From assembly GCA_963514005.1 (NCBI GenBank), contig OY740804.1, positions 19,840,001 to 19,904,000 on the forward strand: a DNA stretch of 64,000 nt, given 5' to 3'. The notes under the pieces were generated by a model. It saw only the letters and a program-made list of their open reading frames with translations. It was not told the origin of the DNA and did not search any database. Below, piece after piece: positions 172-64,000 of the stretch. Origin of the DNA: Raja brachyura (lineage: Eukaryota). How positions within the stretch are numbered: the stretch's first letter is position 1; every line of letters starts with the position of its first letter. Position numbers and translations under genes: made by a program.

Positions 172-651
172 GTGAGTACGGATATGGGCGGAGGCCATGA
201 CTTTGTGTGGTGTTTGTAGAGGGAGAGAGGGGCGGGGGGGGGGGGGTACGAGTGGGTTTCAGAGATTCATTCAGGACAGAGGGAGTTAGTGACAGTGGTG
301 ATAACAGTGAGATGAAGAGCATTCTTCCAGTCTGATGGCAGTCCATTCCGCCCATCTTGTCTGAGTGCACAGGCTCTGCAGAGGAACTGGTTCCACGCCT
401 TCGTGGGTGGCTTCGGTGGGGGGAGGGAAGTGCAGGTCTGAGAGGGGGGGAGGGGGCGGCAGAGGTGAGGCGCTGGCACAGGAAGGGGAGAGAAGGGAGG
501 TTGATGAGGGGTAAGAAGGAGAAGGGGAGGTAGATGAGGTGCGAGAAGGGGGGGGAGGGCAGGGGAGAAGAAAATAAAAGGTGTTTGCATTGAGCCTCAC
601 GGTGGTATCGAAGTAGGCCAAGGACATACACGTGGTGTCTCTCGCTCTCAG

Positions 652-735
652 GGGGAGTTCGGGGTGTATCTGGTCTCTGATGGCAGCAGTCGGCCCTACC
701 GCTGCAAGATCAAAGCTCCCGGCTTTGCCCATCTG
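652..735 (+). CDS. NDUFS2: NDUFS2 coding exon
   Basis: ctctcag|GGG...CTG|gtagg; 84 bp; [28 protein letters not shown]. Confidence 0.97.
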
Positions 736-11698: not shown

Positions 11699-12032
11699 CT
11701 TCACCGCAACAGACAGTCTCTCCCAACGAGGCTGTTCCCAATGGACTGCTCCGCTGCTGCCTGCCGTCAATTTGTCCGCCACTAGGAACAGTCACCCAGG
11801 GATACTAACGGGAGAGAAGGGAGGGGTGGGGGGTAGAAGAAGAGAGCGAGGGGGAGAAGGAAAGAGGAGAAAGAATAGGAAATTGAGGGGGAGAGGGGTG
11901 GACAAATGAAACGAGACGGGGTGGGGTGGGTGGGTGGGCGGCTGGTACGAAGACGGGAAGCTACCTGGTACCTCTCATTGGGTCCAACTGTTTTCGACAT
12001 CCTCTGATCCTCACTCACCTCTTTCTCGCCAG

Positions 12033-12124
12033 CTGGACTGCAGGAGCCCGAGATTTGTTACGTTCTGGACGCCGTTCTGTTCCTTTATGGGACAGTGTTA
12101 ACGGTTCTGTACTGCCGTCTGAAG
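12033..12124 (+). CDS. FCER1G: FCER1G exon 2 (short ectodomain and transmembrane helix)
   Basis: ctcgccag|CT GGA...AAG|gtgagt; 92 bp; (A)[30 protein letters not shown] with the dimer Cys and TM Asp typical of FcR gamma. Confidence 0.97.
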
Positions 12125-31260: not shown

Positions 31261-31629
31261 GTTTAGGGCCAGTCTGGGCTGGGTCACACTAAGGTGTCAT
31301 GGGACACCGGGACCACTCACAGGAGTGACAACGGACATGGAGCTGGAGAGAAATTCCCGGGATTCACAGAACCATAAACAGGACACAGTGTAGAGTTTGT
31401 GGATGAGTGCGGGCAGTGGTCGGGAAGGGGACGCAGTGCACGTGTAGACTTACTCCAGCAACAACTGGCCGAACTGAAGGGGGGGGGGGGGGGGAGTTAA
31501 ACTTGTGGGTGGAAATGAACTGGGATTGGTTTAAAGTTAACTTGTGGCTGTTGGAGACGGGGTGTTGGGTATCGTGGGGTCCACAAGGATCTCCCTTACT
31601 CATCTTTCTTCTATCTGCCCCAACCTCAG

Positions 31630-45206: not shown

Positions 45207-45219
45207 TCTGTAGGCTAAT

Positions 45220-47450: not shown

Positions 47451-47686
47451 GCTGCCAACTTTGGGAGTTTCTGGCTGCACTCCTTGCTCACGCCTACCTC
47501 CTGGATGGGACGTGTCATCTGGAGCTTGGGCTCGGGACGTCCTGTAAGCAGCCTCCGATTACGGACCAGGGATCCAGCACCGTGCCAGGCTGTGCCAGGC
47601 CGTGCCACGCCACACAGCCCTACCCTGCCCTTTTCACCCTCCACACTCCTGCCCACCCCTGCAGTGGGGAGGCGAGGGTTTTGGGG

Positions 47687-48100
47687 ATGATGTTGGGACG
47701 GTCGCTGGGACTGTGGTGCTTGCTGGTGTTGGGGGCGAGGAGGCAGCCGGGGGCACGAGGGCAGCAGGGGATGGTGGTGGGCACGTCTCGGCTGCGGCGG
47801 GTGGAGCTGCTGGTGGTGGTGGACGTGGGTCTGGCGCACGCCCTGGGTGGGGAGGTGCGCCCCTACGTGCTGGCGCTGCTGGGCGCGGCGGATCGGCTGT
47901 ACAGGCACCCGTCGCTGGGCAGCGCAGTCAGGCTGGTGGTCAGCCGGCTGGAGGTGGTGTGGGACCAGGCCATGGGTCCGCGGGTCGATCCCGACGCCAG
48001 GCAAACTCTGCACGCCTTCTGTCGCTGGCAGCGGGAACGGCGGGCACTGGGAGACTGGGGAGAGGCACCGTACGATGCCGCCTTGCTGCTGACACGAGAG
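47687..48100 (+). CDS. ADAMTS5-like metalloprotease, first coding exon (signal-like N-terminus plus start of catalytic domain)
   Basis: MMLGRSLGLWCLLVLGA...SRLRRVELLVVVD...ADRLYRHPS...FCRWQ...LGD..E..YDAALLLTRE|gtaggg (phase 0). The start codon is inferred; a good acceptor lies at 47664/47665 and the ORF is open from 47393. Confidence 0.85.
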
Positions 48101-48101
48101 G

Positions 48102-49600
48102 TAGGGCACACCCACCAGGGCACACTCACTGGGGCACACTCACCAGGGCACACTCACTGGGGCACACGCACCAGGGCACACTCACTGGGGCACACTCACC
48201 AGGGCACACTCACTGGGGCATGCTCACCAGGGCACACTCACTGGGGCACACCCACCAGGGCACACTCACTGGGGCACACTCACCAGGGCACACTCACTGG
48301 GGCACACCCACCAGGACACACTCACTGGGGCATGCTCACCAGGGCACACTCACTGGGGCACACCCACCAGGGCACACACTGAAGCAAACCCACTGGGACA
48401 CACCCATTGGGTAACACTCACTGGGGCACACCCGCTGGGGCACACTCGCTGGGGCACACTCACTGGGGCACACTCACTGGGGCACACCCACTAGGGCACA
48501 CTCACTGGGGCACACCCACCAGGGCACACTCACTGGGGCACGCCCACCAGGGCACACTCACAGGGGCACGCCCACCAGGGCACACTCACTGGGGCACGCC
48601 CACCAGGGCACACTCACTGGGGCACGCTCACCAGGGCACACTCACTGGGGCACGCCCACCAGGGCACACTCACTGGGGCACGCCCACCAGGGCACACTCA
48701 CTGGGGCACGCCCACCAGGGCACACTCACTGGGGCACGCCCACCAGGGCACACACCGAAGCAAACCCACTGGGACACACCCGTTGGGTAACACTCACCAG
48801 GACACACCTGCTGGGGCACACTCACCAGGGCACACTCACCAGGAAACACTCACTGGGGCACGCTCACCAGGGCACACTCACTGGGGCACGCCCACCAGGG
48901 CACACTCACTGGGGCACGCCCACCAGGGCACACTCACTGGGGCACGCCCACCAGGGCACACTCACTGGGGCACGCTCACCAGGGCACACACCGAAGCAAA
49001 CCCACTGGGACACACCCGCTGGGTAAAACTCATCGGGGCACACCCGCTGGGGCACACTCAGTGACACACTGACAGGGACACACTCACTGGTACATGCATC
49101 AGGGCACACTCATGGGGAACCACTCACTGGCACAGTGAATAGGTTACACTCCCTGGGGCACACTCACAGGCACACTCACCATGACAAACTCATGGGCGCA
49201 CATGGTTACACTCACCATGACACACCTACTGGGGCACAGTCATGTGCACACTCATCCATGACAAATGCAAGGGCACACTCATAGACACAATTCCCATGAC
49301 ACATTCATGCACAGATTCACCAGGGCACACTCACAGGCACACTCACTAGGGTCTGTGCACTGAGGCTAGGGCACACACATCATGACATTCACCGTAGCAC
49401 ACCCATCAGTGCACCCACAAAGGCACATTCACCAGGGCACACTCGATAGGAACACTTACCTTGGCACACTTACAGTGACACACTCACAGGGCAAACCCAC
49501 AGGAGCACACTTGATGGGCACACTCACTGGGTACATATATCAGGCACACTCACCAGGGCACACTCACAGGGGCACACATCTTGGGTCACTCGCCAACTCA
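48102..49600. repeat. 14-bp-unit minisatellite (GGGCACACTCACCA / GGGGCACACTCACT), decaying 3'
   Basis: Begins within the ADAMTS splice donor; produces His/Thr/Gly-rich spurious ORFs. Confidence 0.92.
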
Positions 49601-50571
49601 GGCTGACTGGGACACATTTGCTGTACTTGCACATCAATGCTTACACTGTGTCAGACTAGTTGTATACACCTGCTGGGTCATACTGCCAACACTCACAAAA
49701 TCACACCTGCAGGAGCACACTCAGTCACATCTGCCAGCGCACACTAGCCGCTCTCAATCCTCTGTACTTAGCATCGCACTCACCTTGTCATAATCTGTGG
49801 CCACACTCGCCACAGTCACATCACTGAGTCACACTCGCTGGACCCACACCCACATTGCTTGCAGCTGCCTGGATCACTCATGCTCACCACTCTTGCTATG
49901 CTCACACTTACCTGGATCAGACAGATGGGACTCACAGTCAATGGTGTGACACTGTGCTCACATTCACAGGATTCACTGCGGCTGCCCAGCTCAGGGTCAC
50001 TTGTCAGATACACACTCACATGGGGTCGAACACACACTCTCTCAATCTCTCCCTCCTTCTCTCTCTATCGATCTCCCTCCTTCTCCCAATCTCTCCCTCC
50101 CTCTCTGTTCTCATTCTCTCTCTCTCTCCCTCCCAACACTTTCTCCCGCTCTTTCTCTCCCCTTTCCCTCTTTAATCCCTCAATTCTCTCTCTCTCGCTT
50201 CCCCCCTCCCTCTCACCCTATAGCTCTCACCTCCCCTCCTTCCCTCTTCCATCCACCCCTCCCTCCCTCTTCCTCCACTCCTCCCTCCCCCTCTCTCCAC
50301 CCCTCCCTCCCTCTCTCCTCTCCTATTTTTGGCAGTAGCTGTTTATTGGGTTCTGCCACATTCCATTGCAAAGGACCGTAAAGCAGCAATAACAAGTCAA
50401 GGAGGCTGTGGAACTGCTGACAAACACAATGTGGTCAGACAGAACCAAAGCTTTCTGAGTTGCCTCTCACAACTCCACAACACAACAATACTGCTTCAGT
50501 AACCACACACACAAACACTGTGACAACAACTCATAAAAATAAGTACAAATACTCCAACATAATCTGTGATC

Positions 50572-50724
50572 ACTGCACCATGGTCCAGGATATTGTCCTT
50601 CAGAGCGCCTTCTCCATCGCTCATGAAATTAGTAATCACTCATGCATGTTTTTAAATCCTTTTTTAGCCTTTACAATGGAGTTTCTTGCAGTCATAATTC
50701 TTTTACCATGGTATTACATTCATC
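50572..50724 (+). pseudogene. Partial, diverged duplicate of the ADAMTS HE-containing exon and adjoining intron
   Basis: Aligns with 51557-51717; encodes CTMVQDIVLQSAFSIAHEI and keeps the gtaatcac donor. Confidence 0.85.
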
Positions 50725-50843
50725 TCTGTACACTGATTGGTGTCTGGGAGTCCCTGGCTCTTGGGGATATCTGTACACTGACTCTCTCTGTACACTGACT
50801 GTCCCCATGCACTTTCTCCGTACACTGCCCCTGTACACTGACT

Positions 50844-51116
50844 GCGGTAGAGTTGCTGCCTTTCAGCGCCGGAGACCCGAGTTCGATCCTGACTACGGGT
50901 GCTGTCTGTTTGGAGTTTGTACGTTCTCCCCGTGACTGCGTGGGTTTTCTGTGAGATCTTCGCTTTCCTCCCACACTCCAAAGACGTACAGGTTTGTAGG
51001 CTAATTGGCTTGGTATAAATGTAAAAACTGTCCCTAGTGTGTGCAGGCTAGTATTAATGTGCATGGATTGCTGGGCCGAATGGCCTGTTTCCACGCCATA
51101 TCTCTATCTCTAAACT
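50844..51116 (+). mobile_element. tRNA-derived SINE (HE1/V-SINE-like)
   Basis: B-box GAGTTCGATCC, central TGGAGTTTGTACGTTCTCCCCGTG...CTCCCACACTCCAAAGAC, CR1-like 3' end; related copies at ~34973-35115 and ~58731-59000. Confidence 0.85.
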
Positions 51117-51477
51117 CTCTCCATACACTCTCTCTCCACACTCTACACAGTATCTGTGCACTCTCTTTGTATACTCAGTACACAGTCTCTGTACACTCTC
51201 TACATAAGCTCTATGCACTGTCTCTGTACACCCTTCTCTGTACACTGACTGTACACGCTCTCTGTACACTCTCTCTGCACACTCTATAAAGTCTCTGTAT
51301 ACTCTGCACATTGTCTCTGTGCATCTCTACACTGACTCTCTGTACATTGTCTCTGTACACTCTCTCTGTAAACTGGCCATACACTGTCTACGCACTCTCT
51401 TTCCCTGCACACTCTCTCTGTACACAGTCTGTACAATCTCCAGCAGCATTAACACCTCGGTGCCATTGACCCGTCAG

Positions 51478-51616
51478 AACCTCTGTCAGGAAAACTTCTG
51501 CGAGTCGCTGGGGCTTGGCCACATTGGGACGGTGTGTGAGGTGGACGGTGGTCAGAACTGTGCCGTGGTCCAGGACATCGGCCTTCAGAGCGCCTTCACC
51601 ATCGCTCATGAAATTG
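51478..51616 (+). CDS. ADAMTS5-like exon (catalytic domain, start of zinc motif)
   Basis: cgtcag|AAC...ATT G|gtaat; 139 bp; NLCQENFCESLGLGHIGTVC...CAVVQDIGLQSAFTIAHEI(G). Confidence 0.93.
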
Positions 51617-51789
51617 GTAATCACGTGGCTGGTTTTAAGTTCTTTTTTTGCCATTACAGGGGGGTTTTCTGCGCAGTCACAATATCTTTGCACAATTATC
51701 ATGGTATTACATTTATCAATACTGCTGTTTGTGCAGTTGTACACAACAGGCATCAAATTACAATATATTTAACTCCACGATACAGTCGG

Positions 51790-53700
51790 GTCCCTGCGGT
51801 GACCAACGATCATGGAGTCTCCATGAACACCGTGTGTTCCCTCTCCAGGGACACGTGGGCACGGAGGTAAGCCCGGAAGAAGGGCAGGCAGTCGGCGGGT
51901 AGAGACCTCACTGCCCATCCCCTGGACCCGACAATGGCCACTTTGGCCAGGCCCAGGAGCAAACCGACATGAGACCCCCCCTCACTGACTCACCCCCTCC
52001 GTATCGGGTAACCAAAGGGCAGGAGCGTGGGGCTGAAATACAGCCAAATCAGAGGAGCAGCCTCATGTAATACAGTGACAGGTGGCTGGCGTATCCATGA
52101 TCCGACGTACAAACCTATTACACGGCAGGGCTGTGTACCACACCGTCCACCACGGGTCCCCGATATAAAGGGAGAGACCTCCACTGGGTACCCTCCCCGC
52201 TATCGGACAGTGGAACAGCCCGCCATGGCGTCTGGACGGGAGACAAGGGTGAGGAAGTGTCGAGTGTGCAGGAGCAGCCAGTACAGCAAGCATTTCCCTG
52301 TGCCCTGGCACGTTGGGTATCTCGGAGACAGCTCATGTTGTGTGGGACCGGCTCCCGGGAAAGATCCCGGGGCTTGGGGCCGGTGAGCAATTCCAGTGGA
52401 GCGGGGTTAAGCCCGGTCAGAATCGCTCCACGCTCACGATCATCTCTGACACCCATCGTGACAGGGGGAGGACCGGCCACTCTCATAGCTACAACACCCC
52501 CTCCCTCTGACGAGTAGCATGTTTGCGGAAAGTGACCAAATCTTGGGCTCTTAATTGCTCATAGTGAATACTTGGCCAACCTAGTTTTTACAAGGCTTAC
52601 AGCTGACCAGATATGGAACATCCTTGGCGTACTCTCCTTCCATAGTGAAGAGGCCCCAGCAAGGATCCGTTAACCTTTACGAGACTCTCTGCAGTAACTT
52701 ACAAAAGCCAGACGGGCTACGAAATGCGACCTTAGTCCAAACACTTGCAGAGTCCTTGAAAAGTTAGTCATGATCCATCCTGTCAAACACTTTCTCCTGA
52801 TCAAGGGATAGAAAGGCGACTGAATGACTAACTTCCAGTTAGTCTGAACGAACAACTTCTAGGAAAGGTGGGTCGTGGAGTAGATGGACGTTTCCTAGTT
52901 GGACCAGCCAGGATGGTGTAGGACCGGTCAGGGTGGATCACTTGGACCAGCACGGAGCCTGTCAATTTGCCATTGGTCGGGCATAAGGAAGAACTTATAC
53001 TTTGTGCTGAGGCGAGACACTGGGCACTACTCCTTAGATAACCAAAATCCTTCTGGGATGTCCTTGGGGGCAACTACATGCAGCTCCCTGAGGGAAAGCA
53101 TGGTCACCAGGGAGATGCCCCCTCTGCCCCTCTCACGGGGTAGTTGTCATCCTGCTGCCCAAGCCCTATCAGCCCCAGGCCCTGGCAGCCCCTCCATCCC
53201 TGGGGACTTGACCCTCCTGAGTGGCGCTGGGCATTGGTCAGCTCCCCCAATGCCAGGAGACCATTGAGATGTGGGAAACATCTGGGCCAACGGTTAGTAG
53301 GCCCTTCCAAAAGACCCCTCACATCCTCGTTGGATGGATCCGACGAGAATAGCCTTGTAAAAGGACCAGGTTGAGGCACTAATCCTGCCCAGATCTGTGA
53401 CAGTGGGGCAGTGTCTGCAGGTAGCTCCACAAGCTACCAGGAAACATCACAATTTTTCCAGAGAGTAGAAAGGTGAAGCGCGGTCCAAATTATGCCATGT
53501 CTGGACCCATGACCTCACGTATAAACCACAGGACCACACAAGCTGCAAGTCCCTCAGTGCTGCTTCCCGCTCTTGTACAATCGCCACTGGAGTGTGTACC
53601 CGCAGTCCCACCCAGGACATACTCCAAGTCGAGCACCTCTCCCACAAGCCCCCAATTCAGATTTCCCAACTCCTGGTTGACATTCATGCAGACTGCTGAC
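51790..53700 (-). mobile_element. Degenerate Tx1-clade LINE
   Basis: Reverse-complement LLLGLAKVAI C-terminus near 51.9 kb; decayed RT-like LQVFGLRSHFVARL near 52.7 kb; upstream boundary uncertain. Confidence 0.5.
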
Positions 53701-53852
53701 CACATGAGCCGTTCCCACAGTCCACCAAAACCTTCCAAAGTCTCACCACTTTTTAATGCTCTCTGACAACTAACCCTTCTGATTTTATTTCACAGACTCA
53801 CACAGAGCTCCTATTAGTGTCTGACCTTGAAGTGTACTGGGACAGTGTAGAC

Positions 53853-55589
53853 TGTCAAAACAATCAAAACAATCACGGACTATAAGACTGCTCCACCACC
53901 CTGTGATGACAACATTGAGTTCCTCAATGAACTCAACAACTATTTTGGACGGTTCGAGGCATTAAATAACACACCTGCAAGTAAAGGTATTCCTCACTGT
54001 GATGAACAGGCACTCAGTCTTGACATAGTGGATGTACGGAGGACCCTAAAAGGAGTGAACGCACGAAAGGCGGCAGGCCCTGATAACATACCAGGGCGGG
54101 TGTTCAGGGAATGTGCTGATCAGATGGCACATGTCCTTACGGACATATTTAACACCTCGCTGAACCAGGCTGTCGTCCCATTATGTTTCAAGACTGCCAC
54201 CATCATACCAGTGCCAAAAAAATCCAACATACATTGTCTCAACGACTACCGTCCTGTAGCACTCACCCCCATAATGATGAAGTGCTTCGAGAGGCTGGTC
54301 AGGGACCATATTACCTCCAGACTCCCCTCCACACTTGACCCATACCAGTTTGCTTACAGGCCAAACCGCTCCACAGAGGACGCTATATCCTCTGTACTCC
54401 ATCTGAGCCTGGAACAGTTAGAGGAGAAGAACACCTATGTGCGAATGCTGTTCGTGGATTTTAGTTCAGCATTCAACACAATTATCTCTCAGCACCTGAT
54501 AAGCAAACTGGTTCCATTGGGCCTCAGCACCCCCATGTGCAACTGGCTACTGGACTTCCTCACTGACAGACCCAGTCTGTGAGGGTTGGAAATAACACCT
54601 CTAACACCATCTCTCTGAGCACCGGCTCCCCTCGGGGCTGTGTCCTGAGTCCACTGCTGTTTACCCTGATGACCCACGACTGTTGTGCCAGGTTTAGTAC
54701 AAACCACATCATGAAGTACGCAGATGACACAACAGTGGTGGGCCTCATCAGGGACGACAATGAGCTGGCTTACAGGGAGGAGGTGAAACAACTGGTGGAC
54801 TGGTGCAACACGAACAACCTGATCCTGAATGTCGAAAAAACAAAGGAGGTCATCGTCGACTTCAGGCAAAACCGGCACAGTCCCACACCACTTCACATCA
54901 ATGACAGCGATGTGGAGGTGGTCAGTAGCACTGAGTTCCTGGGGGTGCAGATCACTAACAGTTTGACCTGGTCAAATAACATCTCATCAACTGTTAAGAG
55001 AGCGCAGCAGCGGTTGCACTTTCTGCGCCGGATGAGAAGAGCTCACCTCCCCCATCCCATCCTCACCACTTTCTACAGGGGCACCATAGAGAGTATTTTG
55101 CCAGCTGTATCTCTGTCTGGTTTGGGGACTGTAAAGTCTCTGACTGGAAGTCCGTGCAGAGAGTGGTGAGGACAGCGGAAAAAATCATCGGGACCTCTCT
55201 CCCCTCAATCGGGGATATTGCAACCAAACGTTGCGTGTCTAAGGCCAGCAGTATTATAAAAGACCCCACACATCTCCATCACGGACTGTTCACTCTGCTG
55301 CCTTCGGGCAAAAGATATCGCAGCATAAGGAGCAGAACATCAAGGTTCTCTGCAACAGCTTCTACCCACGAGCCATCAGACTCCTGAATGCCACGTAATG
55401 GGCTGTCACCATTGTCTATTTATCCATTTATCCTTTTATCCTTTTTATCCATTTTATCCATGTGTATCCTTCTGTTAATTATCGTGTTGCACAGGGAGCC
55501 AAATGCAACGGAATTTCGTTTGGAACTGCATATCTCGATGTATTTCTAAATGACAATAAAGTTTGTTTGACTTTTTGACTTTGACTTTG
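53853..55589 (+). mobile_element. Rex/Babar LINE, 5'-truncated, frameshifted RT
   Basis: [29 protein letters not shown] and KYADD; AATAAA then (GACTTT)n tail; TSD AGAC at 53849-53852 and 55590-55593. Confidence 0.93.
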
Positions 55590-55643
55590 AGACGGAGCTT
55601 CACTCTGTGTCTGATTGTGTCCATGTTGTCTCCCTATTCGCAG

Positions 55644-55811
55644 GACATCTCATCGGCATGGCACACGACAACTCGGAGATTTGTGTGCAGATGGGGGAGG
55701 ACTCCTGGGGTCACCAGATGATGTCTCCCATGTTGTCCAGAGTCAACATGGCTGCGCCCTGGTCTCTCTGCAGCGTTCGCTTATCCCTCGGATTCTTTGC
55801 AAGTGGCAGGG
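55644..55811 (+). CDS. ADAMTS5-like exon (zinc motif completion and Met-turn)
   Basis: tcgcag|GA CAT...AGG G|gtgaga; 168 bp; completes HEIGHLIGMAHD, then C...HQMMSP...PWSLCS. Confidence 0.93.
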
Positions 55812-55835
55812 GTGAGACTTCGTGCAAGGGGGTCG

Positions 55836-56340
55836 GTGAGGGAGCGCCGCGCTGTGGGGGGGGGGGGGGGCGGTGAGGGAGCGCCACGCTGTGGGGGGGG
55901 GCGGTGAGGGAGCGCCGCGCTGTGGGGGGGGGCGGTGAGGGAGCGCCACGCTGTGGGGGGGGGGGTGAGGGAGCGCCACGCTATAGGGGGGGGGGTGGTG
56001 AGGGAGCGCCACGTTGTGGGGGGGGGGGTGAGGGAGCGCCACGTTGTGGGGGGGGGGCGGTGAGGGAGCGCCGCGCTGTGGGGGGGGGGCGGTGAGGGAG
56101 CGCCACGCTGTAGGGGGGGGGGTGAGGGAGCGCCACGCTATAGGGGGGGTGGTGAGGGAGCGCCACGTTGTGGGGGGGGGGTGAGGGAGCGCCACGTTGT
56201 GGGGGGGGGTGATGAGGGAGCGCCACGCTGTAGGGGGAGGCGGTGAGGGAGCGCCGCACTGTGGGGGGCGGTGAGGGAGCGCCGCGCTGTGGGGGGTGGG
56301 GGGTGGTGAGGGAGCGCCGCACTGTGGGAGGGGCGGTGAA
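55836..56340. repeat. G-rich ~30-bp minisatellite (GGTGAGGGAGCGCC(A/G)CGCTGTG(G)n)
   Basis: About 16 units with variable poly-G, starting ~25 bp after the exon donor. Confidence 0.92.
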
Positions 56341-56994
56341 GGTGCCGTGCGCCGGTGAAGGGGCGGAGAGGTTCATATGAGGCTCGATGCTAAAGTGCAA
56401 GGCTGGCAGGATTAGGGAGCTCAGGTTTGTGAAGAATATTGAGGTCATGCTCATTGAGGCATTCGTCATGCCTTAGCAGCTGAAGTCAAGCGAGGAGTAG
56501 CAGGTATGTTGGAGTACACAAGATGCAAATGAGGAGGGAAAACAAGGTCATAAAACAGATTAGATTAGTTTATTGTCCTTTACTTGAGTGTGCAATTAAA
56601 TTCCTTGTTCACATGAAGCTAACAGAGTAAACAGTACACAGCAGATGATACTCACAGCCTTCTTTATGCAATGCATCATTAAGGTAGACTGGATAGTAGC
56701 AAGGGCCGTGTTCACCACTCTCTACAGCTTCAAGGTCAAGGTCGGTATGGATATGATTCGTAGTGTTGAAGTCAATAGTGTAGTCAATAGCATTCTGACA
56801 TAGGGGTTCTTCCTGACAAGGTGATGCAGGGCATAATGTAACACCAGATGTATGGCCATCCTACAAAGACCTATGTTTCTTGTCTCTGTAAATCTAGTTT
56901 TCCTGTCGCAGAGAAGAATCCAGAGAGATTCTACAAGCATATTAAAAGCAAAAGAGTAATTCAGGGGAGAATAAGGATCGTTAAAAATCAGAGG

Positions 56995-59900
56995 CCCGTT
57001 AAGAATTGCAGAATGTTGTAGACGTAGCCCAGTCCATCACACAGACCAGACTCTTCACCACTGACTCCATCTACACTCCATGCTGCCCTGGAAAAGCAGC
57101 CAACAGAATCAAAGACTTGCCCCACCTTGACATTTCCTTCCTCTCCTTGATCCCGTTGGGCAGGAGGTATAGTTGCTTGACACGTGTCCATGAGACTCAG
57201 AAACTATTTCTTCTCTCTGTTATCAGGCTTCTGAGCGGTCCTTCCATAAGCCTGGGTACTGTCCGATTCACCTCTACTCCATTGCGGACATCTGTCGAAC
57301 TGATGTGCTCCAATGCTGCACCTTCCACCATTCCACCATCGCTCTGTTTATTGTACTTGAGCTCGACTTGATTGTATGTAATGATGGTATTATCTGATCT
57401 GATTGGATAGCATGCAAAACAAAGCGTTTCACCTGTATCTCGGTACACTTAATACTCAACTTAACCCTATGTGTGGAGCCGCAGGAGATGTGCAAGGTGA
57501 TAAATTACTATTTGATTGTTGGTATTTACTGTGGAGAAAGACTAATAGTGAAGTCTTGAAGAGTCCACATTGCAGAGGAGGAGCTGCTGGAGATCTTAAA
57601 CACATGTCTTAAACACATTAAGATTGTTACAATAACAGAGGGAGGTGCCTCGTCCTTGGGACCTGAGCAGATGTATTCTAGAATGTCATTTTGGAAACTA
57701 GGGAGGAAATTGCATGGCCCATGGGTCAACGATAACCATGGATGAGGTACCAGAAGACTTGAAGCTGGCTAATGCGCCCCTTTTCAAGAATGGCTGCATG
57801 AAAAACCCTGGGACCTATAGGCCAACAAGCCTACCCCTGTGGAACTTCACTGGTCACAAATCTCCGGCCAGGATAATTCCCTCTGTCCTCCATGGCTAAG
57901 CCAGTTCTGAAGCCAAACTGCTACATCACTGTGAGTCCCATGCATCTTAAACTTATGGATCAGCCTACCATGAAGGAATTTATCAAGTGCTTACTAATAT
58001 CCACAGCATCCACTGCCCTACCGTCATCAATCGCCTTTGTAATTTCATCAAAATCTCAATCAAGCCATGACCTGCCACAGACAAAGCCAGACTATTTATC
58101 CCAATGAGAGGCAAAGAAAGGGTAGACAGTCAGAACCTTTTTTTCCAGGATAGAAAAGTCAAATAACTGTAAGGTATGAGTGAAACAAAATTTAAAAGAG
58201 ATGTGTGGGATAAGTTTTTTCCACAGTGGGTGGCTGCTTGGGGCAGTGGTTGAAGCAGATATGATAGTGGCATTTATGAGACTATGGATATGCAGGGAAT
58301 GGATTGATATGGATTGTGTGCAGACATGTAAGATTCAGTCTTGGTATCATGTTTGATACAGACATTGTGGACTGAAAGGGCCTGCTCCTGTGGTGTTCTA
58401 TATTCTATGCAATAGGTTGAGCGAAAAGACAGATCCAGTGTGTACTATATAAAGTCCAAAATCTGCAATTAGAGAGGCTGGAGAATGGGTACTGTACCCT
58501 AGCTTATGGAAGGACTGTTCAGAAGACAGAAAACAGAGAGGAAGAAACTGTCTGTGGTGTGCGTTCTGTCAAGCTTCTGTATCTCCTGCCCGATGGGAGT
58601 GGGGAGATGAAGGAATAACTGGGGTGGGAAAGGTCTTTGATTATGTTGGTTGCTTTCCCAGGGCAGCATGAAGTGTAGAATGAGTCAATGGTGGGGAGTC
58701 TGGTCTTTGCTGGAGATTGAGTGGGTTGCACAGTGGCACGGTGAGGCCCAGGTATGATCCTACCTGTGGGTGCTGTCTGTACGGAGTTTGGATATTCTCC
58801 CAGTGATTGCATGGGATTTCTCCGGGTACTCCGGTTTCTTCCCACATTCCAAAGACGTACAAGTTTGTAGGTTAATTTGGCCGTGGAAAAAAAAGTGAAT
58901 TGTTTAGGATAGTGCAAGTCTACGGGGATTGCTGATTGGCGCAGTCCCGGTTGACAAATGGGCCTGTTTCTGTGCTGTATCTATAAACTAAACTAAACTA
59001 TATTTACAACTCTGCAATTTCTTGCATTGTTGGGCAGAAAGCAACCTGCAATGGTTCCCCAACCAAGCTGCAATGCAACCCGACAGTTTGCTTTCTATGT
59101 GTAATTAGGAACTGCAGATGCTGGTTTAAACTGAAGATAAGCACAAAAAGTTGGAGTAACTCAGCGGGACAGGCAGCATATTTAGCGAGAAGGGATGAGT
59201 GACGTTTTGGGTCGAGACCCTTCTTCAGATGTGTGTGCAGAAGTTTGTAAAAATCATACCACGTTTCCTCAGTGTCCTGAGTCGGGAGACTTACCAAAAT
59301 CCAGCATTCCACACTTGCCAATTGGACAGGAAATTAGCTGATGGAAGGAATCAGAGAGTCGTAGTGGTGAGTTGTTATTCCGATTGGTGATTACCTCCAG
59401 TGGAGTTCCCCAGGGATCGGTGCTGGTTTCCTGTTGTCTGTCATTTATATTAACAATGTGGATGATAATATTGTCAACATGGGTTGTAAGTTTGAGGATG
59501 ACACCAAAACTGGTGGTATCGTGGATTGTGCGGAAGGCTGTGTAAGATTACAACAGGATTTAGATGAACTGGAATTGTGGCCAAGGAATGGCAGGTGGAA
59601 TTGAACTCAGGGAAGTAATGCTGCATTTTGGTAAGTTAAACAAGGGTGAGTCACACAGTCAATGGCAAGTGTATGAGTGTTATAGAACACGGAGATCTCA
59701 GGGTGCAGTTGCTTATTTCCTGAAAGTGGGGGGGGGGGGGGCACTAGAAACACAGGGTGGAGAAGGGGTTTGACTTTAATGGCCAGGGGATTTATTACAG
59801 GAGTTATGACGTTATGCTACAGCTCTACAAGGTGTTGGCGAGCCCACACTTATGGTCACATTGTTATGGGAATTATGTCATTAAGCTGGAACAGTGCAAG

Positions 59901-60020
59901 AAAGAAACACAGGGATGTTATCCTCTCATGATGGGCATGTTATAAGGAAAAGCTGGACAGGCTGAGTGCTTTCTCTGGCGTGAAGGAGATGGAGGGGTGA
60001 CCTTATGGAGGCATATAGAA
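56995..60020. mobile_element. Mixed degenerate Rex-like, CR1, SINE and Penelope fragments
   Basis: LQNVVDVAQSIT (Rex), CR1 RT remnants, SINE at 58731-59000, Penelope piece at ~59110-59230. Confidence 0.65.
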
Positions 60021-60136
60021 TCATGAGGTGTAGGGATAATGTTCCTGTTCACTCCTGAGACGATGCAACAGAAAACAACGGAGAGGAGTGAGATGGTCAT
60101 TTCTCGCCACCTCTCTCCCCTGCCCTCATCCTCCTA

Positions 60137-60557
60137 GAAACATAGAAACATAGGTGCAGGAGTAGGCCATTCGGCCCTTCGAGCCTGCACCGCCATTCAA
60201 TATGATCATGGCTGATCATCCAACTCAGTATCCTGTACCTGCCTTCTCTCCATACCCCCTGATCCCTTTAGCCACAAGGGCCACATCTAACTCCCTCTTA
60301 AATATAGCCAATAAATTGGCCTCAACTACCTTCCATGGCAGAGAATTCCAGAGATTCACCACTCTCTGTATGAAAAATGTTTTTCTCATCTCGGTTCTAA
60401 AAGACTTCCCCCTTATCCTTAAACCGTGACCCCTTGTCCTGGACTTCCCCAACATCGGGAACAATCTTCCTGCATCTATCTTGTCCAACCCTTTAAGGAT
60501 TTTGTAAGTTTCTATAAGATCCCCCCCTCAATCTTCTAAATTCTAGCGAGTACAAGC
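60137..60557 (-). mobile_element. CR1 LINE 3' fragment
   Basis: Minus-strand DAGRLFPMLGKSRTRGH...GYGEKAGTGY* with CATAGAAA tail. Confidence 0.9.
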
Positions 60558-60642
60558 CTCTCTCCATTTTTCCAACACTCTCTACCAGCTCCCGCTCTCC
60601 CATCGGCCCCCCAGCTCACGGTTTTCCCTCTCCCCCGCACAG

Positions 60643-60917
60643 GTGACTGCCTCTTGAACGAACCGTCCGTCTCTTTGGCTGAATCCGTCCCTCTTGCCGG
60701 CACGACCTATGACCGGGATATCCAGTGCCGGCTGTCCTTTGGCCCAGGGTTCCGGGCGCGACCGGGCCTGGACCCGTGCCCGGTGCTGTGGTGCTTGGCT
60801 CGGCACCAGGGCGAGTGGCAGCACGTCAGCAAGCAGTTGCCGGCAGCGGACGGGACGCCGTGTGGTGGGGCAGCCGTCTGCCTCCGCGGCAAGTGCACCT
60901 CCAACTGGCAACAACTG
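60643..60917 (+). CDS. ADAMTS5-like exon (end of catalytic domain plus disintegrin-like domain)
   Basis: cgcacag|GT GAC TGC...CTG|gtacgt; 275 bp; DCLLNEP...YD...QC.L.FGP...LWC...LPAADGTPCG...CLRGKC. Confidence 0.92.
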
Positions 60918-61021
60918 GTACGTACCCAGCCAGGGTGGGGGTGAATCACCTGTCTACCCCTGGACAGCGCTGAGGGAGCATCACCTTGTGCCTGACCCTG
61001 GTGACTGTTGCTGTTTTCCAG

Positions 61022-61208
61022 ACTCCGGTAAACGGGAGCTGGGGTCCGTGGGGCCCGTGGAGATCCTGCTCTCGTTCATGTGGAGGTGGGGTCCAATACT
61101 CTCGGCGCCGCTGTGACAATCCCACCCCCACCAACTTCGGCCACTTCTGCCTGGGAACGTGGGAGAGGTTCCAATCGTGCAACCTGGAGTCGTGCCCGGA
61201 CGACAACG
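61022..61208 (+). CDS. ADAMTS5-like exon (thrombospondin type 1 repeat)
   Basis: ttccag|ACT...AAC G|gtaggt; 187 bp; [30 protein letters not shown]...C...SCN...CP. Confidence 0.95.
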
Positions 61209-61931
61209 GTAGGTTCACATGGTCACAAGCAGCCCACTTAGCTTGTCCGCCGCCACCGCCACCACCGTCTCTCACTGCCTCTGATCCTCGGGTACTAAAC
61301 GTTCCCATTGCCCTGCTGCAACTTCCTCATACTAGCCCTTTTTGCAGATCTGCATTAAAGCAGGGTCATCGACTCATAGAGCAATGCGGTAGTGTAACGC
61401 GCCCTTCAGCCCACTGGGCCCCAGCTCACACCAATCACCGATGTACAGCTATGCCACATGAATCCTATTTTTATTCTCCCAGTGGTCCCACATCCCCCCC
61501 TCCCCCCAGATTCCCTTCCTCACCCCCGTCCCCCACATCCACATATTAGGGCATTTCACAGCAGCCAATTAACCCATCCACCCACACATTGCTGGGATGT
61601 GGCAGGAAACTGGAATCCCACGTGGTGACTGGCAGAAGGTGCAAACTCCACCAGCCGAGGTCAGGGTTGATGCTGGGGCACTGAGCTTTGTGATCTGCCT
61701 GAGAGTCTGAAAAATGGCCATAAACTGCAACCGCCCATCCACTTCCCACTTCACGGAGAAAATGCGTGCATCCCCTGCTCTTGCTTTGTTGCACCACTGC
61801 ATTGAACTCTGCGGATCAAATTGCACCTGGCCCTTTTTGGGCCCAGTCCATTGCCCGCTCCATGTACTCTGGTGGTCCCTCTACTCTGAGGGTGGGATGT
61901 GTCTGACGGGAAGTCCGTGGTGTGCCGACAG

Positions 61932-62095
61932 GTGGGAGTTTCCGACAGGAGCAGTGCGAGGCGAGGAACGGCCCATCTCCGGAAGGGACGCTGCAGGAGT
62001 GGGAAGCGTACTACCATGGCATCCGCTGGCCAGACCTCTGCAAACTCAACTGCCTGCTGAAGGGCACCGACCTGGTCACAGTCTTCTCCATCAAG
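61932..62095 (+). CDS. ADAMTS5-like exon (cysteine-rich domain)
   Basis: gacag|GT GGG...AAG|gttcgt; 164 bp; GSFRQEQCEARNG...EW...Y.G....DLCKLNC..KGT....VFSIK. Confidence 0.92.
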
Positions 62096-63571
62096 GTTCG
62101 TCCGTCTCCCCTCCCTACCCAACTCATCTCGCCCCCACACTGCCTGTCTGCTCCTCCAGCCCCTGTTCCCCGCAAGGCCGGCCGCTCAAGGAGGGATTCA
62201 CCCTAAACCCCACCTCCCACACCTTGCCCTTGAATAGATTAACACAGGCTCAATGCATACTGTTGAGTTACATCACAGCTTGGTTTGGGAGCAGCTTTGC
62301 CCAAGACCGCAAGATATTGCAAGGGGTTGTGAATGTAGCCCCGTCCATCACACAGAACTGAGTTTCCACCATTCATTCCGTCAATACTGCTTTCGGAAAG
62401 CAGCCAACATAATGAAAGACATCCTACTCCAGTCATTCCTCTCCCTGCGGTAGGTACAGACACACGAACACCTTCTCCCCCACTGTTATCAGGCTTTGCA
62501 ACTGTCCTCCCCTAAGCTAGCGTCCTCTCTGATTCACCTCTGGCCCATCGAAGACATTGGACTTTGTGTATCGAGCTAATGCACGACATTGCTGAGCACT
62601 ACAGTACATTCTTCACTCTGTATCTTCACATTTCCTCTACTCATTATAGTTTTATTTATCTATAGTATTACACGATTTGATTCGCTAGCAAAACAACGCT
62701 TTTCATTGTACCTCGGTACACATGACAGTAATAAATCTAAACCCACGTGGACCAACACGGGGTCAACACAAGGTCAACATTGCTTCAATGTGGCATCAAT
62801 GCAGGGTCAACTTAGGGTCAATCACATTGAGGCCATGACCAAGGAAGCGCACCAATACTTCCACTAAAGTTTAAGAAAAGTTGGCAGATCTCCAATGATT
62901 CTTAACAACATCCACATATGTGCCGTTGTAAGCATCAGGTTACTGAATGGTCCTCCCCTAAATCAGGGCGCAGTGCCGATCTTCCAACCTCCCACATTGC
63001 AGACCTTGCATTTTTTTTAATCTGCACTTTTTCCCTAACTGTAACACTCTAACGCTATATTCGACACTCTGGTATTTTTCTCCTTGCACTACCTGTTTTA
63101 CATGTGCACAGTTTGATTACACTCGTGTATGGTATGCTTTGACTGGAAAGCGTGCAAACAAATCTTCTCACTGAATCCTGCTATACATGACAGTAATAAC
63201 CCAATACCAAATGCAGGGTCAAGGCAAGGTCACTGCACAATCAACATGGGGTCAATGTGGTGTCAACATGGGGTCAATGTGGTGTCAACATGGGGTCAAT
63301 GCAAGTCAAGACAGGGCAGTGTGGCGTCAATGCTGATCCATATTGAGTCAATGACGTCGATGCAGAGCCGACACGGGCTCATTGCACACTCAATGTTCAA
63401 GTTCAAGAGAGTTTATTGTTATGTGTCCCTGACAGGACAATGAAATTCATGCTTTGCTTCAGCACAACAGAACATAGTAGGCATTGACTACAAAATCAGA
63501 TCGGTGTGTTCATATCCTATTATAGGTGTAAATGTGGTGTCAACCGCAGGTCAATGCACGATCAATCCAGT

Positions 63572-63599
63572 CTGAAGAAGGGTCTCGACCCGAAACGTC
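63572..63599 (+). ncRNA. Minimal hammerhead-ribozyme-like motif in a Penelope pseudo-LTR fragment
   Basis: CUGAAGA-A-[GGGU CUCG ACCC]-GAAA-CGUC; catalytic core intact, stem I only ~2 bp. Confidence 0.5.
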
Positions 63600-63991
63600 A
63601 CCCATTCCTTCTCTCCAGAGATGCTGACTGTCCCGCTGAGTTACTCCAGCTTTTTTTTTATCAATTCGGGGTCAGGCTTTGGTGGCTCTTTCTCTGCCCC
63701 CTGCTGACCCTCGGGCGGGCTAGATGGCTGACATCTCAACCCTGGTGGCAGCTGGGTGCCCTGGGTAGTTGACCCTGAACGATCCCATTCCCTAAGCTCT
63801 GAAGCCGACCTCTACACCGTGCTGAACCTGGCCCCTGCTGAGTGACCATAGCTGGTGTGCGTGCTGACCTAACCTCCAAATGACCCTCGTGGATGACCTC
63901 TTCCCTCCTTGACCCTCGTGTCTGACTTCTCCCATCTGGGCGACCTCTCCTTCCGAGTGACCCATTGGCTGACCCCTGGCCCCTCTCTCAG

Positions 63992-64000
63992 GTGAGGGAC
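63992..64000 (+). CDS. ADAMTS5-like next exon start (runs off window)
   Basis: cctctctcag|GTG AGG GAC = VRD, phase 0, matching the V.DGT start of the next Cys-rich exon. Confidence 0.7.

What the first reader, a model, noticed from the sequence alone, without database searches (positions are those of the whole stretch)
47687..64000. ADAMTS5-like gene in the ADAMTS4 neighbourhood: candidate lost ohnologue retained in cartilaginous fish
Known: human ADAMTS4 adjoins NDUFS2-FCER1G and has no tandem partner, whereas ADAMTS1/5 and ADAMTS8/15 are neighbouring pairs. Seen: diagnostic motifs match ADAMTS5 rather than ADAMTS4. These include SR.R.VELL, A.RLY.H.S, LGD..E..YDAA.L.TRE, HEIGHL.G (ADAMTS4, 1 and 15 have HELGHVFN), PG.D.C, K.LPA..GTPCG, SFR.EQCEA.NG and KGT...VFS.KV, though overall divergence is high. 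Inference: this may be the ADAMTS5-type partner of ADAMTS4 from whole-genome duplication, lost in mammals. Prediction: a true ADAMTS4 lies nearby, possibly downstream, and a conventional ADAMTS5 lies elsewhere next to ADAMTS1.
Basis: partly seen in the sequence, partly recalled or inferred. Interest (0 to 1): 0.78.

Follow-up and report, generated by a model that had tools for sequence, protein, structure and literature searches.

The report
Skate ADAMTS5-like gene beside NDUFS2
A skate carries an expressed, intact ADAMTS protease gene that sits where mammals keep ADAMTS4 but is by sequence a sister of ADAMTS5, most likely an old duplicate that bony vertebrates lost.

Summary
Six exons on the + strand (47687-62099) encode a signal peptide, an ADAMTS catalytic domain, a disintegrin-like domain, a TSP1 repeat and the start of the cysteine-rich domain. 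The gene runs off the window. NDUFS2 and FCER1G exons lie upstream on the same strand.

Orthologues exist in at least 12 elasmobranch species, which NCBI names 'ADAMTS4', '4-like' or '5-like'. In a maximum-likelihood tree this elasmobranch clade is sister to bony-vertebrate ADAMTS5 (100/100). Forcing it together with ADAMTS4 is rejected (AU p 2e-6). Its domain architecture is the ADAMTS5/8 type.

A spliced contig in one probable RNA run shows the gene is transcribed. That run shows no upstream coding exon, and no prodomain is present.

It rests on position, the mirrored (1,4)/(5,this) topology and a long ADAMTS5 stem.

Its two predictions could not be tested. I found no conventional chondrichthyan ADAMTS5 and could not look beyond the window. 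A relocated ADAMTS5 orthologue or a lineage-specific copy therefore remains possible. The scan holds no ADAMTS notes on other DNA of this genome.

The parts
631..735 (+). Exon of NDUFS2 (context marker of the 1q23-like neighbourhood)
   Evidence: Pfam Complex1_49kDa, 37.2 bits, on residues 32-66 of the translation of 538-981. A further NDUFS2-like C-terminal stretch was seen by eye in the frame ending at 1660; Pfam gave nothing for that short piece.
12032..12124 (+). Transmembrane exon of FCER1G (context marker)
   Evidence: phmmer against PDB: Fc epsilon receptor gamma chain 46.4 bits (E 6e-12) against CD3 zeta 36.5 bits. The exon was found with a short recalled motif.
47604..47686 (+). 5' untranslated part of exon 1, as far as a transcript contig reaches
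   Evidence: A contig of run X1 covers 47604-47897. X1 has no depth at 47300-47593 and no joint enters exon 1. Contigs cannot prove a transcript start.
47687..48100 (+). Exon 1 coding part: Met, signal-peptide-like hydrophobic stretch, about 20 residues, then the start of the catalytic domain (SRLRRVELL...). No prodomain.
   Evidence: Translation. Pfam Reprolysin on residues 39-136. Donor GTAGGG. The joint 48100|51478 is seen in an X1 contig. 94-95% identical to P0001 and P0409.
50560..50700 (+). Degenerate partial copy of exon 2 (its 3' half plus the start of the following intron) inside intron 1. It is skipped by the transcript.
   Evidence: tblastn 50571-50633, 67% over 21 aa. The DNA alignment is well conserved only from the exon's 3' half onward. 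The X1 joint jumps over it.
51478..51616 (+). Exon 2: middle of the catalytic domain, ending in HEIG of the zinc-binding motif
   Evidence: Acceptor AG and donor GTAATC. X1 contig covers 51476-51617.
55644..55811 (+). Exon 3: rest of the zinc-binding motif (HEIG|HLIGMAHD), Met-turn region and end of the catalytic domain
60643..60917 (+). Exon 4: disintegrin-like domain. It lacks two of the otherwise conserved cysteines.
   Evidence: Pfam ADAMTS_CR_2, 59.7 bits. PDB: ADAMTS5 80.4 bits, ADAMTS4 64 bits. Cysteine columns. Borders.
61022..61208 (+). Exon 5: central thrombospondin type 1 repeat
   Evidence: Pfam TSP_1, 41.6 bits. Borders.
61932..62099 (+). Exon 6: start of the cysteine-rich domain. 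The donor is at 62096 or 62100. The remaining exons lie beyond the window end.
   Evidence: tblastn to P0001 residues 455-512, 91%. Two possible GT donors. No further exon was seen in 62150-64000 in any + frame.

Best explanation
This is the 5' two thirds of an intact, transcribed gene for a secreted zinc metalloprotease of the ADAMTS aggrecanase group.

Shown:
- The gene belongs to a clade found across sharks and rays. That clade is the sister of bony-vertebrate ADAMTS5 and has the ADAMTS5/8 architecture: catalytic, disintegrin-like, TSP1, cysteine-rich and spacer domains plus one C-terminal TSP1.
- The gene lies downstream of NDUFS2 and FCER1G, the neighbourhood that holds ADAMTS4 in tetrapods.

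Inferred:
- An ancestral tandem pair, one ADAMTS1-type and one ADAMTS5-type gene, existed before the vertebrate genome duplications.
- The 21q-like copy became ADAMTS1+5 and the 11q-like copy became ADAMTS15+8.
- The 1q23-like copy became ADAMTS4 plus this gene. Elasmobranchs kept this gene and bony vertebrates lost it.

How the protein most likely works (inferred from its relatives): it is secreted through its signal peptide. It cuts large proteoglycans or similar matrix substrates with the HEIGHLIGMAHD zinc site, and is positioned by its ancillary domains. In skates and rays it has no prodomain, so it would be made without the usual latency step.
For: Gene reality:
- Six exons have AG/GT borders and coherent phases.
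- A 2519-nt contig of run X1 joins 48100|51478 with GT..AG. That joint is absent from the DNA-like runs X2 and X4.
- Per exon the window is 88-97% identical to the skate proteins P0001 and P0409.

Constraint:
- The zinc motif is kept in 6 of 6 clade members. 30 of 32 conserved cysteines are kept in all six.

Type:
- Clade + ADAMTS5 has support 100 in the quick tree of 65 rows and 100/100 in the careful tree of 43 rows x 792 columns.
- Clade + ADAMTS4 is rejected (dlnL 67.3, AU p 2.1e-6).
- With ADAMTS5 removed, the clade sits next to ADAMTS8, not ADAMTS4.
- Exclusive shared residues with the clade: ADAMTS5 18, ADAMTS15 8, ADAMTS4 3, ADAMTS1 1, ADAMTS8 0.
- A C-terminal TSP1_ADAMTS domain is present in 5 of 5 members scanned and in ADAMTS5, and absent in alligator ADAMTS4.

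Position:
- NDUFS2 and FCER1G exons lie upstream on the same strand. ADAMTS4, NDUFS2 and B4GALT3 are called neighbours of FCER1G in man (passages of PMC10741965).

Old paralogy:
- ADAMTS1 and ADAMTS4 are sisters (95/88), mirroring ADAMTS5 and this clade.
- Clade + ADAMTS5 + ADAMTS8 as one group is not rejected (p 0.43).
- The published topology with ADAMTS4 outside all others is disfavoured (dlnL 20.4, p 0.019).
- The bony-vertebrate ADAMTS5 stem below the split is 0.537 changes per site. The corresponding stem is about 0.03 for ADAMTS1 (ray Narcine). The catshark ADAMTS15-like protein lies inside the ADAMTS15 crown, on internal branches of about 0.05.
Against: - No conventional chondrichthyan ADAMTS5 appeared among the best 120 of 718 hits or of 708 hits, nor among the 6 unnamed ADAMTS5-like proteins I placed in a tree (10 unnamed proteins placed in all). 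The explanation predicts that one exists. The lists are capped. No coelacanth ADAMTS5 is listed in them either. Elasmobranch orthologues can collapse into a single 90% cluster (34 members for ADAMTS15-like). Absence is therefore not shown either.
- The catalytic domain alone supports the ADAMTS5 sistership only weakly (68).
- ADAMTS1+4+15 as one group is borderline (dlnL 12.3, p 0.089).
- A plain count of fixed derived columns on the ADAMTS5 stem (12) exceeds the ADAMTS1 (5) and ADAMTS15 (1) counts much less than the ML branch lengths suggest.
- The clade has a very long stem (1.42), and two ray rows have deviant composition. Long-branch effects therefore cannot be dismissed.
- By my recollection of the human map, the orientation relative to NDUFS2 differs from man and needs one inversion.
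- For exon 1 alone, the best non-orthologous hits include bird ADAMTS4 fragments (47% identity). This is probably because both are GC-rich.
Confidence: 0.6

Rival explanations
1. It is the elasmobranch orthologue of ADAMTS5 itself. It evolves fast and has moved, alone or with ADAMTS1, next to NDUFS2-FCER1G. There is no other ADAMTS5 in these genomes.
For: Sister to bony-vertebrate ADAMTS5 is exactly the place an orthologue would take. No conventional chondrichthyan ADAMTS5 was listed, although a ray ADAMTS1 (P0213) and elasmobranch ADAMTS15-like proteins are in the same collection. The architecture is the same as ADAMTS5.
Against: It needs a move into just the region that holds the family's third paralogue in tetrapods, which is improbable by chance. 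It needs a burst of change on the short bony-vertebrate stem of the otherwise slowest paralogue (stem 0.537 against about 0.03 for ADAMTS1, with the catshark ADAMTS15-like protein inside the ADAMTS15 crown). The capped lists cannot show absence.
Confidence: 0.17
2. It is a copy of ADAMTS5 made within the cartilaginous-fish lineage before sharks and rays split. It is DNA-based, because introns are kept. It landed beside FCER1G and then diverged quickly and lost its prodomain.
For: There is a very long stem and a shortened N-terminus, as in many relaxed young copies. No holocephalan member was seen among the hits.
Against: The landing place coincides with the ADAMTS4 region. The long ADAMTS5 stem argues against this as it does against orthology. 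The clade is old and constrained: zinc site in 6 of 6 members and 30 of 32 cysteines kept. A holocephalan not being listed means little, because only 143 proteins passed among 8000 word-selected candidates.
Confidence: 0.13
3. It is the true orthologue of ADAMTS4, as NCBI names it in Amblyraja radiata, and the resemblance to ADAMTS5 is an artefact of fast evolution in tetrapod ADAMTS4.
For: It has the same neighbourhood. NCBI names it 'ADAMTS4' or '4-like' in 4 of the 9 clusters listed. Bird ADAMTS4 fragments are among the best non-orthologous hits of exon 1. Brunet et al. report accelerated evolution of therian ADAMTS4 (passage).
Against: The AU test rejects the clade (p 2.1e-6), although composition and long branches would pull that way. 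There are 3 exclusive shared residues against 18 with ADAMTS5. A C-terminal TSP1 is present here and absent in ADAMTS4. Sauropsid ADAMTS4, which is not therian, was used in the trees.
Confidence: 0.04
4. It is a decaying or non-functional gene: no prodomain, two cysteines lost, a 'LOW QUALITY PROTEIN' label in a related skate, and a pseudo-exon in intron 1.
For: No Pep_M12B_propep domain in 0 of 5 members scanned. P0409 and P0155 carry NCBI's low-quality label.
Against: All six window exons are open with good splice sites. There is a spliced transcript contig of 2519 nt. The catalytic motif and 30 of 32 cysteines are kept in all six members scanned, sharks and rays alike. The two lost cysteines are lost in all six, as expected for one disulfide removed once.
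Confidence: 0.03

Closest known systems
ADAMTS5 (aggrecanase-2) of bony vertebrates
   Same: It is the sister group in every tree. It shares the HEIGHL.G zinc motif, PG.D.C and K.LPA..GTPCG. The domain order is the same, with one C-terminal TSP1. It is the best PDB match for exons 1 and 4.
   Different: Identity is only about 37-42%. The genomic neighbourhood differs: NDUFS2/FCER1G, with no ADAMTS1 in the 47 kb upstream. There is no Pep_M12B_propep prodomain. Two disintegrin-like cysteines are missing. There is a proline-rich linker before the last TSP1 (sequence of P0001).
ADAMTS4 (aggrecanase-1) of tetrapods
   Same: It has the same neighbourhood (NDUFS2, FCER1G). NCBI uses the same name for the Amblyraja orthologue.
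   Different: It is not its relative in trees (AU p 2.1e-6). ADAMTS4 has an HELGH-type motif (5 of 6 rows), no C-terminal TSP1 and a normal prodomain.
ADAMTS8
   Same: It is the other 5-type paralogue. A clade of this gene + ADAMTS5 + ADAMTS8 is not rejected (p 0.43) and appears in the ancillary-domain tree. It is the nearest group when ADAMTS5 is left out.
   Different: There are no exclusive shared residues (0). By Brunet et al. it lies beside ADAMTS15 (passage).
ADAMTS13 (recalled, not tested here)
   Same: It is an ADAMTS with an unusually short prodomain that is not needed for secretion or activity. This is a precedent for a working enzyme without the usual latency (recalled knowledge).
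   Different: It is a distant family member. PDB matches to ADAMTS13 are weak (20-23 bits).

Membership tests
ADAMTS family (M12B metalloprotease with thrombospondin ancillary domains) | Reprolysin-type catalytic domain with the zinc motif HExxHxxGxxHD | tested here: met
   HEIG|HLIGMAHD spans exons 2/3. Pfam Reprolysin on exon 1 and on the whole orthologues. The motif is in 6 of 6 clade members.
ADAMTS family (M12B metalloprotease with thrombospondin ancillary domains) | Disintegrin-like domain, central TSP1, cysteine-rich domain and spacer, in that order | tested here: met
   In the window: ADAMTS_CR_2 and TSP_1, and the cysteine-rich start by tblastn. The spacer and the rest are seen only in the orthologues P0001 and P0409, because the window ends first.
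ADAMTS family (M12B metalloprotease with thrombospondin ancillary domains) | N-terminal prodomain ending in a furin site (typical of the family; I do not treat it as defining) | tested here: not met
   0 of 5 clade members have Pep_M12B_propep, against 3 of 3 comparators. No prodomain-like stretch was found anywhere in the window, including the 47 kb upstream, by tblastn with 5 queries. The transcript contig is colinear from 47604. Sharks keep about 60-80 residues ending in a basic site. Rays and skates keep about 10-20 residues.
ADAMTS5 orthologue group | Branches inside the jawed-vertebrate ADAMTS5 clade at the position of its species | tested here: inconclusive
   It is sister to all bony-vertebrate ADAMTS5 (100/100), which fits an orthologue or an older paralogue. 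The 0.537 stem favours the latter. No conventional chondrichthyan ADAMTS5 was available to decide.
ADAMTS5 orthologue group | Lies in tandem with ADAMTS1 | tested here: inconclusive
   No ADAMTS1-like sequence lies elsewhere in the window (tblastn with P0213 hits only this gene's exon 1). ADAMTS1 would be expected downstream, beyond the window end.
ADAMTS4 orthologue group | Groups with ADAMTS4 in a tree | tested here: not met
   AU p 2.1e-6 against it. ADAMTS4 groups with ADAMTS1 (95/88).
ADAMTS4 orthologue group | Adjacent to NDUFS2 and FCER1G | tested here: met
   By my recollection of the human map, the order and strand differ from man.
ADAMTS4 orthologue group | No TSP1 after the spacer | tested here: not met
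   A C-terminal TSP1_ADAMTS is present in 5 of 5 orthologues scanned and in none of the one ADAMTS4 scanned. The window itself does not reach that part.
Ohnologue of ADAMTS5/8 retained only in cartilaginous fish | A conventional ADAMTS5 (and ADAMTS8) also present in the same genome | not testable with these tools
   The protein searches are capped at 120 rows. The scan's notes hold no other ADAMTS window of this genome.
Ohnologue of ADAMTS5/8 retained only in cartilaginous fish | Lies in the paralogous chromosome region of the third family locus | tested here: met
   NDUFS2 and FCER1G lie upstream. Only two marker genes were seen. Wider synteny was not seen.

The most novel reading that the evidence does not exclude
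The ADAMTS1-type/ADAMTS5-type tandem pair predates both vertebrate genome duplications. The 1q23-like copy was then resolved in opposite ways. Lobe-finned fish and tetrapods kept the 1-type gene (ADAMTS4), and elasmobranchs kept the 5-type gene. On this reading the 'ADAMTS4' of skate annotations is a hidden paralogue of mammalian ADAMTS4. This elasmobranch enzyme has further shed its prodomain, stepwise from sharks to rays, and would then be a naturally latency-free aggrecanase-type protease in animals whose whole skeleton is cartilage.
Probability: 0.3. Interest if true: 0.7.

Novelty: new member of a known kind. Interest (0 to 1): 0.55.

Why it matters
The only detailed history of this gene group that I could read (Brunet et al. 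2015, passages) sampled no cartilaginous fish. It places the tandem duplication between the two genome duplications and leaves ADAMTS4 as a loner. A 5-type gene in the ADAMTS4 region, together with the mirrored (1,4)/(5,this) topology, would move the tandem duplication before both rounds. It would also add a sixth member to the aggrecanase group.

It is also a practical warning. The same gene is labelled ADAMTS4, 4-like or 5-like in different elasmobranch annotations, so cross-species comparisons of 'ADAMTS4' would mix paralogues.

The missing prodomain makes it a natural test case for what ADAMTS prodomains are needed for. The gene itself is already annotated. What is new is its placement.

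Tried and rejected
- True ADAMTS4 orthologue: rejected by the AU test.
- Pseudogene: rejected on open exons, splice sites, a spliced contig and conserved catalytic residues.
- Hidden prodomain exon upstream: tblastn with the first 300 residues of 5 proteins found nothing outside the known exons. The queries were two shark members, ADAMTS5, ADAMTS4 and ADAMTS1. The X1 run shows no joint into exon 1.
- The long N-terminus of the NCBI models P0001 and P0409 (MGRVIW...): in this window that ATG (47505) is in another frame than exon 1 and lies upstream of the transcript contig. I take it for an annotation artefact.
- Finding a conventional chondrichthyan ADAMTS5: a full-length Polypterus query and a catalytic-domain-only query chosen to favour slowly evolving outgroups both listed only bony vertebrates. 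The six unnamed ADAMTS5-like proteins proved to be teleost or mammal by tree. The Atlas look-up gave only family names.
- Unnamed representatives that looked like divergent ADAMTS4 or ADAMTS1 turned out to be invertebrate proteins: Limulus, Centruroides, molluscs, sea urchins and Ciona.
- Paper search was badly designed (any 2 of 6 terms) and listed only shark papers without ADAMTS.
- Supplementary trees of Brunet et al. could not be opened. They may show which species were sampled, though the main text has 0 mentions of shark, chondrichthyan, cartilaginous or lamprey.
- Rows left out of the careful tree that were in the first tree: the elasmobranch-clade member P0156, the invertebrate or long-branch rows P0122, P0072, P0134, P0143, P0141, P0054 and P0073, and several redundant vertebrate rows. 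The partial or low-quality clade members P0155 and P0157 were in neither tree.
- The window's own exons were never joined. The spliced model was searched exon by exon, and the database proteins P0001 and P0409 (88-97% identical per exon) stand in for it in the trees.

Full report
WHAT IS THERE

On the + strand from 47687 to about 62099 lie six open exons with AG acceptors, GT donors and coherent phases. Exon 1 (47687-48100) starts with Met and a hydrophobic, signal-peptide-like stretch. After about 20 more residues it runs straight into the start of an ADAMTS catalytic domain (SRLRRVELLVVVD...). Exons 2 and 3 carry the rest of the catalytic domain, with the zinc motif HEIG|HLIGMAHD split over their border. 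Exon 4 is the disintegrin-like domain, exon 5 the central TSP1 repeat and exon 6 the start of the cysteine-rich domain.

Pfam recognised 3 of the 6 exon translations (Reprolysin, ADAMTS_CR_2, TSP_1). The three short ones gave nothing. No further exon is visible up to 64000, so the gene continues beyond the window.

The eighth has one more residue than written. Only four of them are specific to ADAMTS5 plus this gene's clade in my alignment. Each was searched on its own, and the joined step was left out.

SURROUNDINGS

An NDUFS2 exon lies near 631-735 (Complex1_49kDa, 37 bits). An FCER1G transmembrane exon lies at 12032-12124 (46 bits to the Fc receptor gamma chain against 36 to CD3 zeta). Both are on the + strand. 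An ORF at 31554-31781 has a weak Ig_2 match below Pfam's cut-off. The rest of the 47 kb upstream is mostly repeats and reverse-transcriptase fragments.

In man ADAMTS4, NDUFS2 and B4GALT3 are described as neighbours of FCER1G (passages of PMC10741965). The exact human order and strands, ADAMTS4 head to head with NDUFS2, are my recollection. On that recollection one inversion of the NDUFS2-FCER1G block turns [ADAMTS4<][X<][NDUFS2>][FCER1G>] into the skate order NDUFS2> FCER1G> X>. This also predicts a 1-type gene downstream.

RELATIVES

A search of 1.84 billion representatives with exon 1 found 244 proteins at E up to 0.001. The best was P0001 (96% identical), then P0002 (72%), then a drop to 47%.

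P0001 is NCBI's 'ADAMTS4 [Amblyraja radiata]'. With P0001 as query the top nine clusters were all elasmobranch proteins, named '4-like' or '5-like'. They come from Pristis, Mobula, Scyliorhinus, Mustelus, Chiloscyllium and Rhincodon. Cluster look-ups added Mobula hypostoma, Hemiscyllium, Stegostoma and a second skate protein, P0409, labelled LOW QUALITY.

The window is 88-97% identical per exon to P0001 and P0409 and identical to neither. It therefore comes from a third skate. After the elasmobranch clade, scores fall in this order: ADAMTS5 (about 595-550 bits), ADAMTS1, ADAMTS15/8, then sauropsid ADAMTS4 (about 474-440).

One result points the other way. For exon 1 alone, the best non-orthologous representatives include bird ADAMTS4 fragments (47% identity). 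Both are GC-rich, which probably explains this.

PHYLOGENY

A first tree used 65 rows and 957 columns (LG+C20 PMSF, quick). It put the elasmobranch clade as sister of bony-vertebrate ADAMTS5 with support 100.

A careful tree of 43 rows x 792 columns gave the following:
- Clade + ADAMTS5: 100/100.
- ADAMTS1 + ADAMTS4: 95/88.
- ADAMTS8 beside the latter: 76/65.
- ADAMTS15 branching first.

AU tests gave these results:

| Constraint | dlnL | p | Verdict |
|---|---|---|---|
| Clade with ADAMTS4 | 67.3 | 2.1e-6 | rejected |
| Clade + ADAMTS5 + ADAMTS8 | 1.07 | 0.43 | not rejected |
| ADAMTS1 + 4 + 15 | 12.3 | 0.089 | borderline |
| ADAMTS4 outside all others (Brunet et al. topology) | 20.4 | 0.019 | disfavoured |

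Further checks:
- The catalytic domain alone supports the ADAMTS5 sistership only weakly (68).
- The ancillary domains alone support it at 99 and place ADAMTS8 next.
- With ADAMTS5 removed, the clade sits beside ADAMTS8 (weak branch, 24) and not beside ADAMTS4 or the outgroups.
- Exclusive shared residues with the clade number 18 for ADAMTS5, 8 for ADAMTS15, 3 for ADAMTS4, 1 for ADAMTS1 and 0 for ADAMTS8.
- treekit flags deviant composition for two ray rows and for mink ADAMTS4, and a very long clade stem (1.42). Both effects should pull towards ADAMTS4, yet the tree does not go there.

ORTHOLOGUE OR OLD PARALOGUE

Sister to bony-vertebrate ADAMTS5 is what an elasmobranch ADAMTS5 orthologue, a lineage-specific copy or an older paralogue would each show. 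Three things favour the older paralogue.
1. The gene lies in the region that holds the family's third locus in tetrapods. A random move there is improbable.
2. The topology is mirrored. ADAMTS1 pairs with ADAMTS4 and ADAMTS5 pairs with this clade. That is expected if a 1-type/5-type pair was duplicated as a unit.
3. The ADAMTS5 branch between the split and the bony-vertebrate crown is 0.537 changes per site. The matching branch is about 0.03 for ADAMTS1, where a ray (Narcine) marks the split. The catshark ADAMTS15-like protein (P0046, named) lies inside the ADAMTS15 crown, on internal branches of about 0.05.

The plain column count is less striking: 12 fixed derived columns against 5 and 1.

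Against the paralogue reading, I could not show the conventional ADAMTS5 that it predicts. The best 120 of 718 hits and the best 120 of 708 hits are all bony vertebrates. This is weak evidence for three reasons. The lists are capped at about 85-86% identity in the catalytic domain. No coelacanth ADAMTS5 is listed in them either. And 34 elasmobranch ADAMTS15-like proteins fall into a single 90% cluster, so there may be only one or two target clusters.

The scan's notes hold no other ADAMTS window of this genome.

EXPRESSION AND THE 5' END

One small run of 2017 (X1, 'RNA?' by guess, organism A) holds 0.13 of the sampled words. That is close to the exonic share of the stretch given.

Laid on 47300-51700, X1 gives a 2519-nt contig that covers 47912-48098 and jumps to 51476-51617 over a GT..AG intron. 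This is the modelled exon 1/2 joint, and it skips the pseudo-exon. A 295-nt contig covers 47604-47897. X1 has nothing at 47300-47593.

The DNA-like runs X2 (0 differences, probably the source species) and X4 (a relative) cover introns and lack the joint. Contigs cannot prove a start or a level, and the RNA label is a guess. The splice joint is nevertheless hard to explain otherwise.

Several observations fit together:
- There are no prodomain-like hits upstream.
- Pep_M12B_propep is absent in 0 of 5 clade members, against 3 of 3 comparators.
- A matching signal-peptide-like N-terminus starts the Pristis and Mobula models.

I therefore conclude that translation starts at 47687 and that skates and rays lack a prodomain. 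Sharks keep about 60-80 residues ending in a basic, furin-like site.

HOW IT MOST LIKELY WORKS

Shown:
- The zinc site is intact in 6 of 6 members.
- 30 of 32 conserved cysteines are kept in all six. The other two, both in the disintegrin-like domain, are replaced in all six.
- The ancillary domains and one C-terminal TSP1 are complete in 5 of 5 orthologues scanned.

Inferred from the family:
- It is a secreted protease of large matrix proteoglycans, guided by its ancillary domains.
- Without a prodomain it would lack the usual furin-dependent maturation. There is a recalled precedent in ADAMTS13.
- The two missing cysteines probably formed one disulfide. I did not test this.

WHAT IS KNOWN

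Brunet et al. 2015 (PMC4349717; abstract and passages read) place the tandem duplication between the two genome duplications. They treat ADAMTS4 as the copy that lost its duplicate and report its loss in ray-finned fish.

Other papers and searches:
- Passages of PMC10499240 and PMC1867822 add nothing on sharks.
- 'adamts5' + 'elasmobranch': 0 papers.
- 'adamts4' + 'ndufs2' + 'synteny': 0 papers.
- 'adamts4' + 'shark': 56 papers, and the 10 listed all concern cartilage or arthritis.
- 'adamts' + 'ohnolog' + 'chondrichthy': 1 paper, on perforin.

Within that library the placement of this gene is not in print. The gene models themselves are public.

VERDICT

The ADAMTS5-type identity is well supported. 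The ohnologue interpretation is the best reading at about 0.6, with its two predictions still untested. Interest is moderate: a revision of one gene family's history, an annotation trap, and an unusual prodomain-less enzyme.

Noticed in passing
47687-47790: The signal-peptide-like start is followed almost at once by the catalytic domain. Rays and skates of this clade have no prodomain, and sharks have only about 60-80 residues ending in a basic site.
   Followed up: partly
47505-47627: The upstream ATG used by the NCBI models of two other skates (MGRVIW...) is in a different frame from exon 1 in this window. It lies upstream of the transcript contig's end at 47604. The long N-terminus of those models is probably an annotation artefact.
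   Followed up: partly
50560-50700: A degenerate copy of the 3' half of exon 2 with the start of its intron sits inside intron 1. The 5' half of the exon is not recognisable, and the spliced contig skips it.
   Followed up: yes
60643-60917: Two cysteines of the disintegrin-like domain that 31 of 33 other aggrecanase-group rows keep are replaced (R/Q and H) in all six clade members. This looks like one disulfide lost once in the clade's ancestor.
   Followed up: partly
48100-49300: Intron 1 begins with a long array of short tandem units that read as GHTHQGTLTGA-like ORFs in several frames on both strands. Read contigs break up there.
   Followed up: no
50828-51121: A very high-copy element lies in intron 1. 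Summed contig depth is 10^5 to 10^6 in all three runs, with hundreds of loose ends and false joints.
   Followed up: no
54028-55169: Reverse-transcriptase-like ORFs on the + strand lie inside intron 2 (LINE fragment, by eye). Similar fragments are scattered upstream, for example at 19883-20551, 41795-42571 and 43984-45288.
   Followed up: no
31554-31781: An ORF has a weak immunoglobulin-domain match (Ig_2, 17.4 bits, below the cut-off of 27) between FCER1G and the ADAMTS gene.
   Followed up: partly
47300-51700: Run group X4-X7 (organism C) holds about 0.6 of the words, with about 1-2% differences, including in introns. A closely related species therefore shares the locus.
   Followed up: no
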